DNA from: Podarcis melisellensis
Lineage: Eukaryota
DNA length: 64,000 nt
Direction: 5' to 3' (one strand)
Assembly: GCA_964234715.1 (NCBI GenBank)
Contig: OZ174285.1
A program made the position numbers and the translations under genes. Each line of letters starts with the position of its first letter. Position 1 is the first letter of the stretch. The notes beneath the pieces are model-generated. The model worked only from the letters and a program-made list of their open reading frames with translations. It had not been told where the DNA came from and did no database searches. Positions 14,773 to 60,770 of the stretch are shown here, one piece after another.

Positions 14773-15072
<300 letters not shown>

Positions 15073-17785: not shown

Positions 17786-18013
17786 GAGCGGCAGAGAAGT
17801 GCTCAAAGCATGGGGCCGAGGATCGCACCCAGAACATCATCATGGCCATGAAGGATCGCATGAAGATCCGAGAGAGGAACAAACCAGAGATCTTTGACCT
17901 GATCAGAGATGTCTTCAGTGAGAGCAAAATGACCCACTCTCAGCAGATGAAGACGGTCAAGCAGAGCGTTCTGGACGGTACCTCCAAGTGGTCAGCCAAA
18001 ATCACCATCACAG
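17786..18013 (+). CDS. UNC13B: C1-C2B linker exon ([15 protein letters not shown]...KWSAKITIT)
   Basis: TGCAG / CAG|GTCAGC; 228 nt, phase 1-1. Confidence 0.96.
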
Positions 18014-18126: not shown

Positions 18127-18291
<165 letters not shown>

Positions 18292-18423
18292 TAAGTATTT
18301 GTGTGTTGTTTTTTCCACTCTTTCATAGCTTCCCGTGTTGTCCTTTTTGTTTACAAAACACCTTGGGGGGGGAGGGGACACAAATACCTGCCAAATATCT
18401 CAATAATAATAAAAAGGCCAAAA

Positions 18424-18481
18424 GTTGTTGTTGATGATGATGATGGTGATGACGATGATGATGATGATGATGATGATAATG

Positions 18482-18525
<44 letters not shown>
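18424..18525. repeat. compound (GTT)n(GAT)n(AAT)n microsatellite
   Basis: Read directly from the sequence. Confidence 0.95.
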
Positions 18526-18527
<2 letters not shown>

Positions 18528-18949
18528 ACATTTAATCTATTTAGCCCTGATTCAAGATAGCAGCATCCAGGGGCGCAAGAAGGGGGTAGCCACCCACCCA
18601 CAGGCATTTCTGGAGAAAGACAATTGAAAGGGGCCCAGTTGTCTGGCTTATCGTCTGGTTTGTGTAGTGAAATTCCTTGGTAGAGGCAGGACGTACAACT
18701 GCGGTGATCATCTGAATTCCCTGCTGGAGATGGGAGTTGGAGATTGGGTGCTACAGCAGAGCTGCTCTTTTCTGACGGTTGGATTGAGAAGGTGGTGCTG
18801 AGCCTGCAGCCATTGTACAATATAGCTTTACTCTGTCTTGTCCCCCGACCTCTTCAATGTCTTCTTGAAACCGACAGGGGAGGTTTGCCAGGGATTTGGG
18901 TATCTGCCTTTTCATCTGATCCAGAAGAGACTGTGGACGTCTGGGCTCC

Positions 18950-50781: not shown

Positions 50782-50859
50782 CCCTGCATCCTGATGAACA
50801 ACATCCAGCAGCTGAGGGTGCAGCTGGAGAAGATGTTTGAAGCCATGGGGGCCAAGGAG
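50782..50859 (+). CDS. UNC13B: MUN exon [26 protein letters not shown]
   Basis: GCTCAG / GAG|GTGAGA; 78 nt. Confidence 0.96.
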
Positions 50860-51607
50860 GTGAGAGCTCGGAGGAGCCCTTCTGAGGGTGGGGCTCAGCG
50901 CTGCCTCGTAAGCTGGTTGGGGATTGGATTTTGTGGCTGGAGAAATGGGTAGCTTGCAGGCCTGCCCCTGATTGCATCATGCACCACCAAGAGTCAGAGT
51001 GGTGAACTATAATTCCCACCAGGCCCAGCCTGAAGGCTAATGGTCAGAAGGGGGGGGAGAGATGGACGGACATGTTGGCTACTCCTGTCATAGTCAGAGA
51101 AGGACGGGAAGATGAGATCACGGCCTTCGTTGAACACGTTTCCTAACTCTTGAGTTTCTAAAGGGTTCGTATGGATGTGCTGATTCTTACTTTATAAATG
51201 GCCTGAAACATTCACACCATCGGTTTGCCATGTGGCGGCCAACCTGAGTGAAGCTGGGTTGCTGAAAGCTGAGATGCAAATGTGCAAAGACTTTGCTGAA
51301 TGAGTCTGGTTTGAAAATGTGCTTCTTCCAGAAGCAAGTTCCAGCTGCTACAATTGGCTTTGGGTCATCCTTCGCAGCTGAACAGACTGTGTGTGCCCTT
51401 TCTCATTATTCTGGATGCTTGCTGGGCCTGTGTGGATACAGCTGTGTTGCCTGATGCCTTCCAAGCCCTAAACGCCTGTTGTCCTTAACTGGAGGCAGGA
51501 TTTCCCCCCTCTGTCGCTGATTCAAGCTGTGAGATTTTCTGTAATGCTGTGAGAATGCTTGGCCTAACCTTTGCATGTCTGTCTCTGTCTTTCCCTTGCT
51601 TTCCAAG

Positions 51608-51781
51608 ACTGAGAATGTGGAAGAGAAGGAGAAGGAGAAGGAGAAGGACCAGGATCAAAATCAGAATCAGGATGAGACTCAGAATCAGGATGAGAATCAG
51701 GAACAGAATCAGGAACAGGAAAAGGATCAGAATCAGGAACAGAATCAGAATCAGAATCCTGAACCGAGGAATCCTAAGGCT
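51608..51781 (+). CDS. UNC13B: candidate alternative exon encoding a 58-aa E/Q/N/D/K low-complexity insert
   Basis: CTAAC branch (51564-51568), long pyrimidine tract, CCAAG acceptor, phase-0 open frame, 174 nt. The donor GCT|GTTAGA is weak. Confidence 0.42.
51622..51760. repeat. compound hexamer repeat (GAGAAG)n(CAGAAT/CAGGAT/CAGGAA)n
   Basis: Read directly; overlaps the candidate exon. Confidence 0.92.
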
Positions 51782-51846
51782 GTTAGAATCCATATTGCTT
51801 ACTCTTAGCCTTAAGACACTTCCTCCTTAGCCGTGACTTCCTAGAT

Positions 51847-52052
51847 CAGAGCTTTCTAGACTGTGTGTCGCGACACGCTAGTGTGTCGGCTGCAGAATGT
51901 AGGTGTGTGGTGTGAATGCTCCTCGCGCTCCTCCCGGGGCTGGAAAGGGGTTAGTTTAACCTCCGGTTTACTTGTAAAACTGAATTCCTGTGTCATGAAA
52001 TGATGCCTGTCTAAAAAGTGTGTCCCCGACATGGAAAGTTTGGAAAGCTCTG
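51847..52052. mobile_element. hAT MITE
   Basis: TSD TCCTAGAT / CCCTAGAT; TIRs CAGAGCTTTCTAGACT / CAGAGCTTTCCAAACT. Confidence 0.85.
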
Positions 52053-52978
52053 CCCTAGATCCTGAATAGATGTAGGCTCTGCACGTGGCAGGGAACTCCA
52101 TGGTGGCACCTTGGCATGGGGTGGCTTCTCCCTGGCAGCATGTCAAGAAGCAGCTCAGAGCTCTGCAAAATATCCTTAGGAAAAAGCATGGAATGGGAAG
52201 TGATGGCAGAGGCTATTGGTGGGTGCGGAGAACAGACCCAGGCTGCCTTGGGCAAAGTGTTGCCATCCATCGGGTCTCTCTTGCTCCCTCTGGCCAACTT
52301 TGGTCTCCAGCACTGCTGCTAGGAAGAGGCCTTGGTGTCCCTGAAGTGCCTTAAGCGGTTTCCCCCTGGTGCCTCCATCCCAAGTTCTGCTCCGTGCAGA
52401 TTCTCAGTCCCTCTTGCCTTAGCCTGTGTGCCGTGCAGGGACTCAGAATGCTGTTCCTCAGCCTGGCTAGCGAGTGTCGGCCACTGAGATGACGTAGCTC
52501 TCCCGCTTTTGGATTTAGTCAGCTGAGCAAATAGCTAGAAACATTTGCTGCTCGTTTTAGTGCAGAGCTTCACCCTTCCCTCCCCGAAGCCTTTCCCCTT
52601 CCCAGCTTATCTAGAGTTTCCCATGAGTCACCTGCTGCTTTTTCTCTAGGTCTTCTGTAGCGGGAAGGCTTGCCAAATGAAAGCAAATCCTGCACTTACA
52701 GGAACTTGCCTTCCGGAATTAGAGTAGTCATAGTCATTGATGGCCTTATCTAGCTTGTCGTGTGTGAGTGTGTTGACCCTTTCGTTGTGAGTCTCCATGC
52801 AGCTGAGACTGGGGGGACATGGGAATAGCCTGCTGGATCAGACCAATGGCCCAATTGGTCCAGCGTCCATGGACCTCCATCAGGCATTTCCCAGTTTTTT
52901 GCAGGGGGTGGGTGGGTGGACAGGAGAATGGGGTTTTTAAAAGTTTTATGTCTGAGTACTCTTTTTCTTGCTCCAGAG

Positions 52979-53114
52979 CAGGCATAGGCCAACTCAACCC
53001 TCCAGGTGTTTTGGGACTACAACTCCCATCATCCCTCACTAACAGGACCAGTGGTCAGGGATGACGGGAGTTGTAGTCCCAAAACATCTGGAGGTCCGAG
53101 TTTGCCTATGCCTG
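52979..53114. mobile_element. hAT hairpin MITE
   Basis: Perfect 8-bp TSD CTCCAGAG; TIR CAGGCATAGGC; almost fully self-complementary. Confidence 0.93.
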
Positions 53115-53122
53115 CTCCAGAG

Positions 53123-53330
53123 GTTTCCCCATGAAAACCCGCTCTTTACTGCGGAATTGGAGCAAACAGAAATGCACGGAAGCACCCAGTTGCCGCTTCT
53201 TGCGTTTCATCTTTAAAGAGCAGGTTTTCACGAGGAATGCTCCAGGGTAAAAGAAAAAGCAATCACGGTTTTAAAGTGCAGACTCATGCCTGGGAAATGT
53301 CAGGCAAAAGGTAAGTGTGGATCAGTCCTT
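53123..53330. mobile_element. Harbinger-like MITE (right part), interrupted by the hAT MITE
   Basis: aaaacccgctcttta...ttggagcaaa...tttaaagtgcagac...aagtgtggat core shared with the other copies. Confidence 0.55.
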
Positions 53331-54723
53331 ACTCTCTCTTGTGTTCCTGCCGAATGAACACCGGACCATGTTAAGGTGTAAGAGCCATCAATAAATAGTA
53401 TTATTTCCAATGAATGCAATAAGCACATAGTTTAACCATGGTTTGTTCAACAAGCCACAGGTTGTCTCTCAGTCGAGCAGAGAAGCCAGGACTTCTTTCC
53501 AGAGCCGCCTTTGTTTCCCAGCTGCCCTTGCCTCCAGACTCTGTTGCTTAGCACATGCCCAGTGTGGGCAAACTATAGTCGGTTAAGACACTTGGTTTCA
53601 GACATAACATAAAACCATAGTTAAAATATGGTTCGTGAGCCCTTTACAAACCACATCATCACATCTTGGTTTGTTACCAGAAAGTAAACCACGGTTATTG
53701 TGGTGGGCTGGGTTTGGACATTCAGAGAAGCCGCACTTTGGCTAGGCAAGCCGTGGTTTAGTGTTAGGTGTGTTTCATTCGCACAACCACGTCATCCCAC
53801 AACAGCCCCATCCCCAGCAGTGTAAGAGCAGGTGGGGAGTTGAGACCAGCCTAAAGCAGAGCTGATGTTCATCCTCCCTGACTTGAGCCAGCGGGGCTGA
53901 AGCTGAGTTGAGAGATATTTAATGTTATGTTATTAAGTAAAAGAGAGAGAGATGATCTCCCTGGCTGCCCACCTGCATCTTGCTATGGGCTATACCTGTG
54001 GAGCAGGAATAAAGATGCTGGGGCCGGGAGGGAGGGAATCTCGCTCATGGCTGCGCTTGCCCAGGGCCTGCCTGTTCCTGGGCAGCGTGACTCATGCCAG
54101 GGGGGCAGCCGTTCCCTCGGCGCTCACACAGTAATGAGACTGGCTCCCTTAATAAGGCACGACACACACCAGCTTCAGCTGGTTGAATCCTGAGAGGCTT
54201 TTTTAAGCAGCCAGCTCTGCGTGCTCCATCCTCCTCCTCCTCCTCCTCCTCCCGGGGAAAGGGAGAGTTTGCCTTCTGCCGCAGGGTCACAGCCCAGTTT
54301 CCTACGCCAACTGGGACGAGGAGGAGGGGAGGGAGGCCTGGGGCTCCCACCTGACCCAGTCCTGAGATGCACTCCCATTCCAGGGCAGGTGAGAAGTCTC
54401 CAAAGTCCCAGCATCAACAGGGCATTCGCTTGTGTGTGATCTTGGGGCCCTGTGACGTTAAGCTCTCGAATGGCTGCTGATTGAAACAGAGGTCCTTAAT
54501 TTGCCCCAGTGGGCGAGAGGCTTGTGGTATCATCTGACCAGAGGCTGAAACCCATTCGCAAAATTTATCCAAAGTACATTGGCAGGAAAGCAGTGAAAGC
54601 GTTTCAGTTGTGGGAGGAAACACATCAGGTTATAATATGATTGCACGCGGAAACAAAGTGTGAATTTAGGATTAAAGCATTGGGTGAGGTGGCTGTTAAA
54701 TGCAATAATTGTGGCCAAACTAC

Positions 54724-55497: not shown

Positions 55498-56370
55498 CCA
55501 ACAGAGGTTTTTGTGGGCAGGCGTCTCTCAGGGGTGCAATAGTCAGAGGCCAGGGGTGAACTATTGGGGGTCCCTTTTGTTGCTGCAACGCCCTGTCTCC
55601 GCGGATGGGCTCCTGTCTCTGTCCCCACCCTGCCTGGAATATAATGGAAAGGCAGAACAAGTGTACTTAAAATAATAATCCCTGGGAAAGAACTGACAGC
55701 ACATCTGTTGAGAGAGACACTCCAAACCAGCTTGAAAAGGTGCTTGTTTTTAATGGCAGTCGTTGGCCCAGAGCCCAGAAACCAGCAATGCCTACAGGTA
55801 GCTAAGGAATCTCTCTTGCCAAAGGCTCTGGCAGGGTGGCTGAGTGGATTTTGGCGTGTTTGCAGCATGGAAGGGAGCAGAGACAGGCAGCGTCTCCCCT
55901 CTGCTGCCTTCTAGATGGGCTTCCACCCATTGCCTTCCCCTTTCTTTCCCCTCTCAATTCTCCCGTGAATGTGCGTAGCCCTGAGTCGGGACCTAAGTCT
56001 TGTGTTTGCCACACAGGTTGGCACCAAGAGAGTCTTGCCGGCTTGGCTCGGCAGGTCTGGACTGTCCTCAACTCCGCAGTTGCTGGGGGACAGAGAGCCG
56101 TGGCCTCGCGGACGGTCTTTCGCTTGCTGCGTCCTTTGCCAGGCAGGGCTTTCTGATGCCAGCCAGATGTTGCTAGAAGCGGGGGAACTTTTGGAGCCAC
56201 CAGGCGCTGCTGCAGAGTTGCTTGCTCCTAGTTCCTAGCACCAGCGTAGTACCGACAGATGCACCCTCCTAGCCAACCGGCCGTTGATCTAGAACTCTGT
56301 GTCCGAATGCAGGCAGTGGGCACAGATGCTCTTGGCGCTTCTCACTTCCCTTCCTTCCTCCTGCCCACAG

Positions 56371-56459
56371 CTGGATCCAGAAGCCAGCGACTCCCTCAAG
56401 GAGCTGCAGGTGAAGCTGAACAACGTGCTGGATGAGCTCAGTGCTGTGTTTGGTAACAG
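56371..56459 (+). CDS. UNC13B: MUN exon [29 protein letters not shown]
   Basis: CCACAG / CAG|GTGGGT; phase 0 to 2. Confidence 0.96.
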
Positions 56460-58218: not shown

Positions 58219-60770
58219 GTAATCCTCTTCCCCTGCTCCTTTGCCCCAAGGAGGTCAAGCAAAGAGGCAGCAGCTGCCCAAGTCACAGCTCACAGAGCCT
58301 CCTGACCAAGAGGGGGATTGAGCCCTGATCTCTCCCAGGTCCTGGGATGCCACTCTAACCACTAGGTCACACCGCCTCTCTTGCCTTTTGCCAATCTTGG
58401 CTGCTCTCAATGGTCTTTGTAGTTGTCCCCTTCCTTCACCCCCCCAACAGCCCCCAGGTGAACAGAGAACAGAGGTGGTACATTTTTAAGTGTAAGCACA
58501 GAGCTGTAGGGCTGGGGGGGGGAGGGGATCTGAACCAGCCCAGGGGCATTTGGACCAGATGGGAAAGAAGGAGCAGGTCTGAGCGTAAGAGATGCTTCCT
58601 CCTCCAGCCTGTTCCCCCCTGGGCTGCCCTGAGTCTGCTTCTGCCCATGCAGTGGGGAAGCAGTAGAGCTGGGGAGCCAGCTTGGAGGCTGGGCTTCCTT
58701 TAAGGCTGCGAGCGATCAGCGCTCCTGCTGCTGCTGCTGCTGCGTGGGCTTGTGTGAGTTGCCGAAACAGAAGGAGAAGCCCTGCCCGCCTTTGTACGCT
58801 TATCGCATGCCCTGCCGCGAAGAGGTTTAAGCGGAGCTGTGAAAATGGCTGGGTCAGGCTGTCTGCGGGGCAAGCCCAGCGGCAGGCGGCAACCAGCCTT
58901 TTCAGAAAGAAAGAAGGAAGCGAGACAAGCGGGGGGGGGGCTGGCTGCAGAAACCCTTTGAAGCTCCCAGGAAGGGGAGGAAAATGGCCCACCAGCCTCT
59001 TCTCTGCACAAAGCCCACCCCCCACTCCGCGGAACAGAACGGACCCAGAGAGAAACGGGTCCCAATTGCCATGGCCAATGGCAGCAAGTGCCACATTGTG
59101 TTCCTCCAAGGAGCCCCCCGTTGCCTTCTTGAGTGCAGTGCCAAGGAAAGCCCCCACCCACTGGTGCAGGGGCTGGAGAGTTGCATGGGGCAGCCAAGAG
59201 ACCTTTCTTTGTGGCGCCATTCTTTGAAATCTTTCCTCTCTCTTGCCTGGCGTGGGGAGGGCAATTTTCGCCCAGCCTTGTAGCAGCCATTAACACGAAC
59301 AAACAGGAACATTTTGCAAAGCCCGTTTTCAGCAGCCCTGTGTCCACGCTGTGCCTGCAGGGAAAGCTTTAAGGATGATAAGGGAAAGGTGCTGCAGCCT
59401 GGTCAGAGACCTGTTCCCTCCGGAGGGCAGGGGAGCCTGGCTTGGGTGGGCCTGGTGCTTCTTGGCACAGTCCCAGGAGCAGCCAGGAGCCCCGAGGCTG
59501 AAGAGGGAGCACCAGGCAGCCGCAGTCGTCAGGAGACGGCTCAGCCAATCGACTCTGGTGCTGTGGAAACGGAGGGATGTCTCCATGCCTGGAGGCCAGA
59601 AGCCCATCGGACTCTGGGTCAGGGGCTGTGGCTGCCAGCTCCCTAGAGCCTGGCGAAATCTTGTGCCCTGGGAAGCACAACTGGCCTGCGGGTGGATGGA
59701 AGGCACACATGTCTTTCTGTGGTGCGTTTGCCACGGCAGGAAGAGCTGAGCTGTCCCTCAAGGTCTGCAGTCAGCGATGGTGGCCAAGGGTGGAGGGGGT
59801 TGCCCTGATCCGCAGGCCCAAAGGAGGAGGGCCTGCACAAGTGGTTTGGTGCAGGGATACCAGAGGAGGTCAGAAACACCAGAGGGATCCATTCTAGCTC
59901 TAGAACAGGCCAATGTACAACACCGACTGCAGAGCCAGACTCGGCACAGACCCTGAAGAGGCAAGCGGTCGCCACGACTTGTCGGCACCCAGGAAAGCAT
60001 TCAGGCATCACGTCTTATACAAAAGCAAGCTCAGGCTTCCAAACTTCAAAGCAGGTGAACATAAGCAAGCTCATTCTGGCAGCAAATGACAACCAGCCCC
60101 AGGGTTATCCTGACTCCCAAGGTGGCGTTTGCAGGCCTTCTGGAACATGGTCACCGTTTTGGTTCTACACAGGGTTCCCTTGTGCCTCTGCCAGGCGAGA
60201 TATTTCCGTTTCTGCAAGAGCTGGATTCCCAATTCCCAGTTTGATTCTAGGCTAAGGCTGGAGGGGTACGTCTGCATGTTCCCTCATATGCGCCTGGCCA
60301 CAGGGTGCGGGGAGGGAGGGAGGGGTTCATGGTGCAAAGGGGCCTGGAAACACTAAAGCAGAGCGCTGTCAACTGGCCCTTTCCCCACGAGCGCAGCAGA
60401 CGGGTGTGGAAAGGAGGTTCTTTGCTTGGGTCTCCTCTTGGTGCTGGAGGAAGAGCCTCGCTTCCCCCTCAAGGGGCCGCCATGACCAAGCCAGCACAAC
60501 ACCCCCAAGGCTGGCTAGCGGCAAGGGCTTTGGAGCCGAGGGGCGATGGTGAGCAGACCAGGGCAGCTTCTACTGGCTTTGAAGTGAAGTTTTCCTCTCC
60601 TTTTTTGTTTCTGCTGGAACCTTTGTGCACTAAATACCCCCCAAGTCTGACCATACCAGCCTTGTATCCGATCCTTCCAGCTGAGCCCTGGGTCTTCCTT
60701 AGGAGTGAGTGGCTTTAGTGGAAGGAGGAGTATGCAGGTAGCCTCTCAGTCAGGTGTAGGGACCCTCTAG

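What the first reader, a model, noticed from the sequence alone, without database searches (positions are those of the whole stretch)
51561..51808. Candidate microsatellite-derived in-frame exon inserting a 58-aa acidic Q/E/N/D linker into the MUN domain
Seen: a strong 3' splice site (CTAAC branch 51564-51568, ~35-nt pyrimidine-rich tract, CCAAG) sits directly before a purine-rich hexamer repeat. In phase 0, the phase of both flanking exons, it reads TENVEEKEKEKEKDQDQNQNQDETQNQDENQEQNQEQEKDQNQEQNQNQNPEPRNPKA. The first GT after the repeat (GCT|GTTAGA) is also phase 0, giving 174 nt. An RBFOX motif TGCATG (51572-51577) lies inside the tract. Known: GAA-rich sequence acts as an exonic splicing enhancer, and the mammalian Munc13 sequences I recall join ...AMGGKE directly to LD.... 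Inference: this is a regulated cassette exon adding a length-polymorphic disordered acidic loop to the MUN rod. If the weak donor is ignored, it could instead be a terminal exon (stop 51806-51808; an AATAAA lies at 53390-53395) that truncates MUN and removes C2C. Caveat: the donor is weak, and this repeat lacks stops in other frames too.
Basis: partly seen in the sequence, partly recalled or inferred. Interest (0 to 1): 0.72.

Follow-up and report, generated by a model that had tools for sequence, protein, structure and literature searches.

The report
Truncating end-exon inside lizard Munc13-2 gene
The repeat-rich stretch is not an inserted middle exon: gene models in related lizards use it as an alternative last exon, cutting the nerve-terminal protein Munc13-2 short and ending it in an acidic tail of variable length, a minor isoform already present in public annotation.

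Summary
The gene is UNC13B (Munc13-2) of a lacertid lizard close to Podarcis. The site lies in the 5.5-kb intron between MUN-domain exons 50782-50859 (…AMGAKE) and 56371-56459 (LDPEAS…).

The cassette-exon reading is not supported.
- Of 192 sauropsid UNC13B models, 187 join GAKE directly to LDPE. None has an insert followed by LDPE.
- The proposed donor GCT|GTTAGA is very weak.
- RNA-type contigs of two related species run unbroken through both proposed sites.

- Two Podarcis muralis models (1709 and 1701 aa) splice GAKE onto exactly this acceptor. They read through the "donor" and stop two codons past the window's TAG.
- A Pogona model does the same at the orthologous acceptor.
- Pogona has no repeat array there, so the hexamer repeat expanded inside an older exon. 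It varies in multiples of 6 nt among relatives.
- The TGCATG motif is not conserved.

The product would lose half of MUN and C2C, so it should not prime vesicles. Its function, if any, is unknown. I obtained no direct junction read: the reads tool masks the repeat.

The parts
50782..50859 (+). Constitutive UNC13B MUN-domain exon ([26 protein letters not shown]), phase 0 at both ends, donor GAG|gtgaga
   Evidence: 26/26 residues align to rat Munc13-1 chains, E 1.5e-10. (tblastn of P0201). In one search the contig X1 record 1 starts 30 nt before 50859, as expected at a graph branch at the donor.
51564..51568 (+). Branch-point-like CTAAC within a conserved block TGGYCTRAC
   Evidence: The block is aligned in Pogona, Phrynosoma and Python (CTAAC/CTAAC/CTGAC/CTGAC).
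51572..51577 (+). TGCATG (RBFOX-type hexamer), specific to this species
   Evidence: In one search, 51575 A>C in runs X1, X6 and X22 gives TGCCTG in three relatives. Absent in Pogona.
51578..51607 (+). Polypyrimidine tract and AG acceptor (…cccttgctttccaag|)
   Evidence: 85% pyrimidine; blastn to the Pogona acceptor region, 74.6% over 59 nt, E 2e-5. The Pogona acceptor ttcaag|ATTGTG is used by the annotated isoform X4.
51608..51808 (+). Coding part of the alternative terminal exon: 66 codons (TENVEEKEKEKEK…NPEPRNPKAVRIHIAYS) plus TAG
   Evidence: In one search, tblastn places P0270 residues 1643-1709 on window 51605-51811 (87% identity, 2 gaps). P0270 and P0276 carry the same tail directly after …[10 protein letters not shown].
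51623..51758 (+). Coding hexamer microsatellite: (GAGAAG)4 then (CAGAAT/CAGGAT)18. It varies in length among relatives by multiples of 6 nt
   Evidence: contig spacing across the masked repeat: +12 nt (X1), -18 (X6), -24 (X22); tails of 66 and 56 aa in the two Podarcis models. Pogona lacks the array.
51782..51787 (+). It is a pseudo-donor that is read through as codons V-R
   Evidence: The orthologous GTTAGG in Pogona is coding. Contigs of X1, X5, X6 and X22 pass through it unbroken (table 8).
53390..53395 (+). AATAAA 1.58 kb after the stop; nearest by 700+ nt of nine polyA-signal hexamers scanned. Possible polyA signal, unproven
   Evidence: There is no depth step at this place, but contig depths are flat by construction.
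56371..56459 (+). Next constitutive exon ([29 protein letters not shown]…), acceptor cccacag|CTG
   Evidence: In one search a contig of depth 82 (X1 record 6) ends at 56369. Depth is 60-86 in three RNA-type runs against 4-24 in the intron.

Best explanation
The stretch 51608-51808 is the coding part of an alternative terminal exon of UNC13B (Munc13-2). It lies in the intron after the exon that ends …AMGAKE.

How it works:
- When the acceptor at 51607|51608 is used in place of the one at 56370|56371, the reading frame runs through a purine-rich hexamer microsatellite.
- The product keeps the N-terminal region, the C1 and C2B domains and the first half of MUN.
- It loses the helices after the GAKE|LD loop and the C2C domain, and ends in a 66-residue acidic, probably disordered tail.

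History of the exon:
- The exon is older than the repeat. Pogona uses the orthologous acceptor but has only GAAGCAGAGGAGAAGGATCC where lacertids carry the array.
- In lacertids this seed expanded into (GAGAAG)n(CAGAAT)n.
- The array stays in frame only because its unit is 6 nt.

What is shown: the sequence features, use of the acceptor in annotated models of Podarcis and Pogona, orthology of the acceptor, and length variation of the repeat.

What is inferred:
- That the same splice occurs in the window's own species.
- That the transcript ends by polyadenylation inside the intron.
- That the isoform is minor.
- That the truncated protein cannot bridge vesicle and plasma membrane. It would then act at most as a competitor for diacylglycerol, calmodulin or active-zone partners, or be a by-product without function.
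For: Gene identity:
- The nearest named proteins are squamate 'protein unc-13 homolog B'.
- Window exons are 97-100% identical to the Podarcis-cluster models in the variable and C1 exons.

Truncated models:
- P0270 (1709 aa) and P0276 (1701 aa) continue …[10 protein letters not shown] with TENVEEKEKEK…/SENVEEKEK… and end …NPKAVRIHIAYSWP.
- P0270 maps to window 51605-51811.
- They sit in the cluster of P0201, whose NCBI members lie on the 67,031,629-bp contig of assembly GCA_964188315.1. One search names Podarcis muralis UNC13B proteins on that same contig.

Pogona:
- Isoform X4 (P0284, XP_078240319.1) is cut at the same junction.
- Its 42-aa tail is encoded right after ttcaag| at L001 59356.
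- That acceptor aligns with window 51608.

Relatives in the reads:
- 51807 A>G in all four runs turns the window's TAG into TGG. This explains the extra 'WP' at the end of the Podarcis models.
- Repeat length differs by +12, -18 and -24 nt.

Structure and function:
- The junction lies in a loop between helices 223-245 and 253-279 of a MUN model with pLDDT 82-97 around it.
- C2C-dependent membrane bridging is crucial for Munc13-1 function (PMC6407922).
Against: - No junction read was seen.
- In run X1 the contig that crosses the exon has the same depth (10.4) as the upstream intron, against 82 for the constitutive exon. Use of the exon is therefore low at best in that sample, whose tissue is unknown.
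- No short ORF from public RNA assemblies carries the tail.
- No common polyA-signal hexamer lies within 850 nt of the stop and the only AATAAA is 1.58 kb away. The Pogona intron has none of the nine hexamers I scanned.
- The tail peptide is not conserved between lacertids and Pogona beyond its first ~20 residues, and the frames differ.
- In Phrynosoma the exon is interrupted 7 nt in by an inserted repeat. In Python the pyrimidine tract is poor.
- Sceloporus, snakes, turtles and birds show no such isoform in the clusters I read.
- The models are automatic predictions, and I could not see their RNA support.
Confidence: 0.65

Rival explanations
1. Regulated in-frame cassette exon (51608-51781, 174 nt). 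It would splice on to 56371 and insert a 58-residue acidic loop into the MUN rod.
For: - Both flanking exons are phase 0 and 174 is divisible by 3.
- The acceptor is real in related species.
- The insertion point is an inter-helix loop.
- The GAR-rich sequence would fit an exonic enhancer (established knowledge).
Against: - 0 of 192 sauropsid UNC13B models has an insert followed by LDPE; 187 join directly.
- The models that use the acceptor read through the GT.
- The donor GCT|GTTAGA departs from MAG|GTRAGT at -2, -1, +3 and +6. By a textbook position matrix recalled from memory its score is roughly 0 bits against about 12 for the consensus.
- Contigs of three RNA-type runs pass 51781/51782 unbroken.
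- The known alternative exons of rat Munc13-1 lie elsewhere, at residues 1416-1438 and 1533-1555.
Confidence: 0.04
2. Plain intronic microsatellite that is not spliced in this species to any meaningful extent. The truncated models in Podarcis and Pogona would reflect rare cryptic splicing picked up by an automatic pipeline, with no biological role.
For: - Contig depth over the exon equals intron depth in X1.
- No RNA-assembly ORF carries the tail.
- The tail peptide is unconstrained, the repeat is free to vary, and the exon is broken or weak in Phrynosoma and Python.
- There is no nearby polyA signal.
Against: - Three separately produced annotations give the same splice. They cover two Podarcis muralis assemblies and one Pogona assembly, from two lizard families.
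- The acceptor, pyrimidine tract and branch-like motif are among the few alignable blocks of the intron between lacertid and Pogona.
- NCBI's Gnomon, as far as I know, builds extra isoforms only from transcript or RNA-seq alignments. I did not test this here.
Confidence: 0.18
3. Internal stop-carrying ('poison') exon. The acceptor 51608 would be used with a donor beyond the stop (for example AAT|GTAGGT after 51898) that splices on to 56371. The transcript would be degraded by nonsense-mediated decay and lower Munc13-2 output.
For: - GT sites follow the stop at 51832, 51862 and 51898, the last with GTAGGT.
- No common polyA-signal hexamer lies within 850 nt of the stop in the window, and none at all in the Pogona intron.
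- The pattern of conserved splice signals with an unconserved peptide fits a regulatory exon.
Against: - Contigs of X1, X5 and X6 run through 51832-51935 unbroken. They end only where the DNA run X22 also breaks, at a high-copy repeat.
- Pogona has no GTRAG donor between its stop and 60989.
- The pipeline issued protein records for these models, which it usually does not do for decay candidates (my knowledge, untested).
Confidence: 0.12

Closest known systems
Alternative last exons / intronic polyadenylation isoforms that truncate multi-domain proteins
   Same: An acceptor inside an intron competes with the downstream constitutive acceptor. The reading frame runs into a short novel tail and a stop. 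The product lacks the C-terminal domains.
   Different: The 3' end is not mapped. No common polyA-signal hexamer lies within 850 nt of the stop and the only AATAAA is 1.58 kb away. Most of the tail is encoded by a hexamer microsatellite.
Known alternative exons of Munc13-1 (rat residues 1416-1438 in the MUN loop and 1533-1555 before C2C)
   Same: Alternative splicing within or next to the MUN domain of a Munc13 paralogue, adding or removing disordered sequence.
   Different: Those are in-frame cassettes at other junctions, in UNC13A. This site is about 120 residues upstream, in UNC13B, and it ends the protein rather than inserting a loop.
Annotated truncated UNC13B isoforms of Podarcis muralis (P0270, P0276) and Pogona vitticeps X4 (XP_078240319.1)
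   Same: Same junction and same (orthologous) acceptor. For Podarcis the tail is also the same apart from the repeat number.
   Different: The window's array is 2 codons longer than in P0270 and 12 longer than in P0276. Its stop comes two codons earlier (TAG where relatives have TGG). Pogona has no array and a different tail after …VR.
Coding microsatellites (hexamer repeats giving variable low-complexity peptide tracts)
   Same: A tandem 6-nt unit inside an ORF. Length changes come in whole units and so never shift the frame. The peptide is acidic and polar with low complexity.
   Different: It sits in a minor terminal exon. Selection on the peptide is probably weak, and its staying in frame needs no selection.

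Membership tests
UNC13B (Munc13-2) gene | Exons encode the C1, C2B and MUN domains, and the nearest named proteins are unc-13 homolog B rather than A or C | tested here: met
   Searches show the C1 exon at 14848-15066, the C2B exon at 18127-18291 and the MUN exons. In one search the top hits are all 'protein unc-13 homolog B' of squamates. The UNC13A-type representative P0034 differs at the junction (GGKDLNVEAS).
Cassette (internal alternative) exon | A 3' splice site that is used | tested here: met
   Indirect: annotated models of Podarcis and Pogona start the exon exactly here. There are no junction reads from this species.
Cassette (internal alternative) exon | A 5' splice site that is used and joined to the next constitutive exon | tested here: not met
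   0 of 192 models have the insert followed by LDPE. The GT is read through. Contigs are unbroken at 51781/2. The donor sequence is very weak.
Alternative last exon / intronic polyadenylation isoform | An in-frame stop within the exon and protein models that end there | tested here: met
   TAG at 51806-51808. P0270 and P0276 end two codons later, P0284 at L001 59482-59484.
Alternative last exon / intronic polyadenylation isoform | A cleavage and polyadenylation site downstream, within the intron | tested here: inconclusive
   The only AATAAA is at 53390, with weaker variant hexamers from 52676 on. Pogona has none of nine hexamers. The contigs available cannot show RNA ends.
RBFOX-regulated exon | A (U)GCAUG near the exon that is conserved among relatives | tested here: not met
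   TGCATG is present in the window. It reads TGCCTG in runs X1, X6 and X22 and is absent in Pogona, Phrynosoma and Python.
Coding microsatellite | A tandem repeat inside the ORF, with length variation in whole units among individuals or species | tested here: met
   (period 6, 4.3 + 18.2 copies). (+12, -18, -24 nt). (66 against 56 aa in two Podarcis models).

The most novel reading that the evidence does not exclude
Many squamates may make, from a conserved intronic acceptor, a C-terminally truncated Munc13-2: N-terminus, C1, C2B and half of MUN, without C2C. This form could act as a regulated competitor or brake on vesicle priming. In lacertids its tail would have become a rapidly evolving, length-polymorphic acidic microsatellite tract that could tune that activity between individuals.
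Probability: 0.12. Interest if true: 0.6.

Novelty: new member of a known kind. Interest (0 to 1): 0.3.

Why it matters
Munc13 proteins are essential for making synaptic vesicles ready to fuse, and the C-terminal C2C domain is needed for that (PMC6407922). A natural isoform lacking half of MUN and C2C would be a built-in loss-of-function or competitor form. It would be worth a look if it is abundant in some cell type.

As things stand it is a minor isoform that automatic annotation already lists for two lizard genera. Its tail shows no sign of selection. The main value of this check is to correct the reading from cassette to terminal exon. It also documents a clear case of a microsatellite expanding inside an existing coding exon.

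Tried and rejected
1. RNA reads.
- The single run search found no run on record as RNA. It found only transcriptome-sized contig sets of related species.
- Laying them showed exon-enriched depth and unbroken contigs. The tool masks 51610-51767, so the key joint could not be seen either way. Even the constitutive 50859>56371 joint was not listed. Absence of joints is therefore weak evidence.

2. Retroposon-tail idea. I asked whether the (ATTCTG)n array is the 3' tail of a minus-strand retroposon. The neighbouring high-copy element (51864-52057) has no second copy in the window and the hexamer array is unique. The Pogona alignment then showed that the array grew from exon sequence. Idea dropped.

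3. Rfam scan of the intron: nothing.

4. Searches for RNA-assembly ORFs carrying the tail. Junction plus tail gave 139 hits, all upstream MUN or intron read-through. The tail alone gave no hit.

5. Fetching DNA of other lacertids and outgroups. I therefore have no DNA-level lacertid comparison beyond.

6. My first guess, that the site coincides with the variable Munc13-1 loop 1408-1452, was wrong. The junction is contiguous in the crystallised chains, and the known alternative exons lie downstream.

7. Literature. No paper in the library links UNC13B with intronic polyadenylation or describes a cassette at this junction.

Working rules.
Exons were searched one by one by reference, and spliced context came only from stored database proteins.
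- One human and one ape protein among the hits were left aside and not used.

Full report
**1. What is in the sequence**

The window carries most of a Munc13 gene on the + strand.
- The C1 exon is at 14848-15066, the C2B exon at 18127-18291, and a run of MUN-domain exons extends to about 62.7 kb.
- The finding lies in a 5,511-nt intron.
- The upstream exon, 50782-50859, ends …GCC AAG GAG|gtgaga and encodes [26 protein letters not shown].
- The downstream exon, 56371-56459, starts cccacag|CTG GAT CCA and encodes [29 protein letters not shown]. Both boundaries facing the intron are phase 0.
- Solved rat Munc13-1 chains align to both exons and join …AMGGKE directly to LD….

- CTAAC lies at 51564-51568 and TGCATG at 51572-51577.
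- A pyrimidine-rich tract ends in ccaag|ACT at 51608.
- (GAGAAG)4 lies at 51623-51648, followed by 18 copies of a CAGAAT/CAGGAT hexamer at 51650-51758.
- The first GT is at 51782 (GCT|GTTAGA), an in-frame TAG at 51806-51808 and an AATAAA at 53390.
- The array is unique in the window.

**2. Which gene and which organism**

- A 75-residue exon (17788-18012) found full-length representatives.
- A region-restricted search with the closest one listed 120 proteins, nearly all named 'protein unc-13 homolog B' of squamates, turtles, crocodilians and birds.
- The best-matching models, P0200, P0201 and their cluster, have their names withheld.
- The NCBI members of that cluster lie on a 67,031,629-bp contig of assembly GCA_964188315.1. 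One search shows named Podarcis muralis UNC13B proteins on the same contig.
- The window is 100% identical to these models in the C1 exon and 96.7% in the variable exon at 3-629.
- It is therefore a lacertid close to Podarcis muralis, but not that species.

**3. Test of the cassette reading**

I scanned 205 retrieved UNC13B models for what follows the motif KMF[ED]xMGxKx (after). The clusters added were not run through this scan.
- 192 carry the motif, and 187 continue directly with LD.E….
- None has an insert followed by LDPE.
- Two exceptions are intron read-through models that begin with V (GT…): one from Naja and one from Phrynosoma.
- The other three exceptions are truncated proteins, described in section 4.
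- About 26 of the models are from Podarcis muralis. Of these, 24 join directly and 2 are truncated.

The proposed donor is poor.
- GCT|GTTAGA departs from MAG|GTRAGT at -2, -1, +3 and +6.
- With a textbook position matrix, recalled from memory and not computed by a tool, it scores near 0 bits against about 12 for the consensus.

Known alternative exons of rat Munc13-1 are at residues 1416-1438 and 1533-1555 (bioRxiv 10.64898/2026.10.23.761409). Neither is at this junction.

An AlphaFold model built on 35 aligned MUN segments places the junction (model residues 250|251) in a 7-residue loop. The loop lies between helices 223-245 and 253-279, with pLDDT 82-97 around it. An insert there would be tolerable. 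Structure does not exclude the cassette; the transcript models do.

**4. What the acceptor is used for**

Two models continue …[10 protein letters not shown] with the microsatellite peptide and then end.
- P0270 has 1709 aa and a 66-aa tail: TENVEEKEKEKDQDQNQNQNQDETQ…NPEPRNPKAVRIHIAYSWP.
- P0276 has 1701 aa and a 56-aa tail: SENVEEKEKDQDQNQNQDETQ…AYSWP.
- tblastn places P0270 residues 1643-1709 on window 51605-51811.

They read through the GTTAGA and stop shortly after it.
- The window's TAG at 51806-51808 is TGG in all four runs laid (51807 A>G). This explains the extra 'WP' before the TAA at 51812-51814 in the relatives.
- The two models come from two different annotations or assemblies of Podarcis muralis. 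One is known only from UniRef and nr, the other lies on GCA_964188315.1.

**5. The exon is older than the repeat**

Pogona vitticeps isoform X4 (P0284, XP_078240319.1, 1637 aa) is also cut after GAKE. Its tail is IVDGEAEEKDPERKGPECVRPNPLSFFSPSLLNCDLLDILNT.

I fetched the Pogona locus (L001).
- The tail is encoded immediately after …cccttgcatttcaag| at L001 59356 and ends at TAG 59482-59484.
- The region aligns with the window. The aligned parts are the block aatg(c/t)ttgg(c/t)ctaac, the pyrimidine tract, cccttgc(t/a)tt(c/t)caag|A(C/T)TG, then GAAG…GAGGAGAAGGA. After a gap in Pogona come (G/A)ATCC…GTTAG… and CTCCTTA(G/A)C(C/T)GTGAC(T/C)TC(C/T)TAGAT.
- Window 51649-51741 has no counterpart in Pogona. 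The CAGAAT-type array is therefore an expansion in the lacertid lineage inside an exon that already existed.
- The GTTAG taken for a donor is coding in both species (A-V-R in the window, C-V-R in Pogona).
- Beyond it the two reading frames differ, so the peptide is not conserved.

Other squamates:
- In Phrynosoma (L002) and Python (L003) the block TGGYCTRAC and an AG|A align at the same place.
- Phrynosoma carries an inserted repeat 7 nt into the exon, and Python has a poor pyrimidine tract.
- In a stricter whole-intron comparison, the acceptor region is one of only three blocks that align between the window and Pogona (74.6% over 59 nt, E 2e-5).

**6. RNA evidence**

Three contig sets of about 100 Mb from two related species (X1; X5 and X6) behave like transcriptomes. 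Depth is 60-86 on exon 56371-56459 against 4-24 in the intron.
- In X1 a contig starts 30 nt before the donor at 50859. Another contig, of depth 82, ends at 56369. This is what an assembly graph with k=31 does at a branch, so spliced and unspliced forms coexist there.
- The intron contig then runs unbroken from 50830 through 51608 and 51781 to 51956, at intron depth (10.4).
- X6 and X5 also cross 51781 unbroken.
- No joint at the proposed sites is listed.

This argues against substantial use of either site in those samples, but the test is weak.
- The tool skips 51610-51767, so a 50859>51608 joint has nothing to lie on.
- The constitutive joint is not listed either.
- Contigs drop rare forms.
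- The tissues are unknown.

The same table gives the repeat length in relatives: +12 nt (X1), -18 (X6) and -24 (X22, a DNA run). All are multiples of 6. It also shows TGCATG changed to TGCCTG in X1, X6 and X22.

Searches for short ORFs from public RNA assemblies that carry the tail found none.

**7. How it most likely works**

Use of the intronic acceptor competes with the strong constitutive acceptor 4.8 kb downstream. The purine-rich start of the exon may help its recognition, since GAR repeats are classic exonic enhancers (established knowledge, not tested here).

The product:
- It keeps the brain-type N-terminus, C1, C2B and about half of MUN.
- It loses at least eight predicted helices of MUN and the C2C domain.
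- Membrane bridging through C2C is crucial for Munc13-1 function (PMC6407922), so the truncated form should not prime vesicles (inference).
- It could compete for diacylglycerol or active-zone partners, or it could simply be a by-product.

The RNA's 3' end is open.
- The only AATAAA is 1.58 kb past the stop, and the Pogona intron has none of nine common hexamers.
- A stop-carrying internal exon that splices on from a donor beyond the stop (for example after 51898) is a live rival. No contig supports it.

**8. Comparison with what is known, and novelty**

The kind is ordinary: an alternative last exon that truncates a multi-domain protein, here carrying a coding microsatellite. The isoform is already present in automatic annotation of two lizard genera. 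I found no paper that describes it.

It fails the test for a cassette exon because the donor is not used. It fails the test for RBFOX control because the motif is not conserved.

The modest points of interest:
- An acceptor shared by lacertids and an agamid, with traces in a phrynosomatid and a python.
- A clear case of a hexamer repeat expanding inside an existing exon and staying in frame for purely arithmetic reasons.

**9. Working rules**

Exons were searched singly by reference.
- One human and one ape protein among the hits were left aside.
- The window has no N stretches.

Noticed in passing
window 52480-52582 (Pogona L001 59889-59941; Phrynosoma L002 58684-58770): A conserved non-coding block about 0.7 kb downstream of the terminal exon's stop. 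It is 75-79% identical across three lizard families and is the best-conserved part of the intron apart from the acceptor. It holds none of the nine polyA-signal hexamers I scanned for. It could be a splicing or 3'-end control element or an enhancer.
   Followed up: partly
window 51864-52057 and 52834-53221: Two very high-copy repeats, with summed contig depth of 1e5 to 3e6 in the DNA run X22 against about 65 for single-copy sequence. The second holds a 143-nt inverted repeat (52976-53117, 85% self-complementary) and looks like a MITE. All contigs break at these places.
   Followed up: partly
P0023 (XP_019961862.1, Paralichthys olivaceus UNC13B-like, 1228 aa): A flounder model is also cut at the same junction (…ESMGAKQ|). 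It ends in an acidic tail, QNELVEEEEEEEEEEAVDEEKQVVTDEQEEAGKALVRTADVGE. This may be a parallel terminal exon or a model cut short by the assembly.
   Followed up: no
P0361 (Tachysurus) and P0364 (Salmo salar), short UNC13C models: Both continue …ESMGGKQ| with a similar non-intronic tail (EEGVVAFCKVC… and EGTVSFCKVC…). Fish UNC13C may therefore have its own conserved alternative exon in the equivalent intron.
   Followed up: no
L002 57780-58010 (Phrynosoma platyrhinos): A palindromic, MITE-like insertion sits 7 nt into the orthologue of the terminal exon. The deposited Phrynosoma protein (P0255) instead reads 114 residues of intron between GAKE and LDPE, which looks like a prediction error.
   Followed up: partly
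window 18295-18624, + strand: The intron after the C2B exon holds an open stretch that would read DDDDGDDDDDDDDDDNDNNNNNNNNNNNNNN. This is another trinucleotide-type repeat (GAT/AAT) in an open frame, seen only in the frame listing.
   Followed up: no
window 51807: The window's stop TAG is TGG in all four related runs and in the Podarcis models. This species' tail therefore ends two residues earlier than in its relatives.
   Followed up: yes
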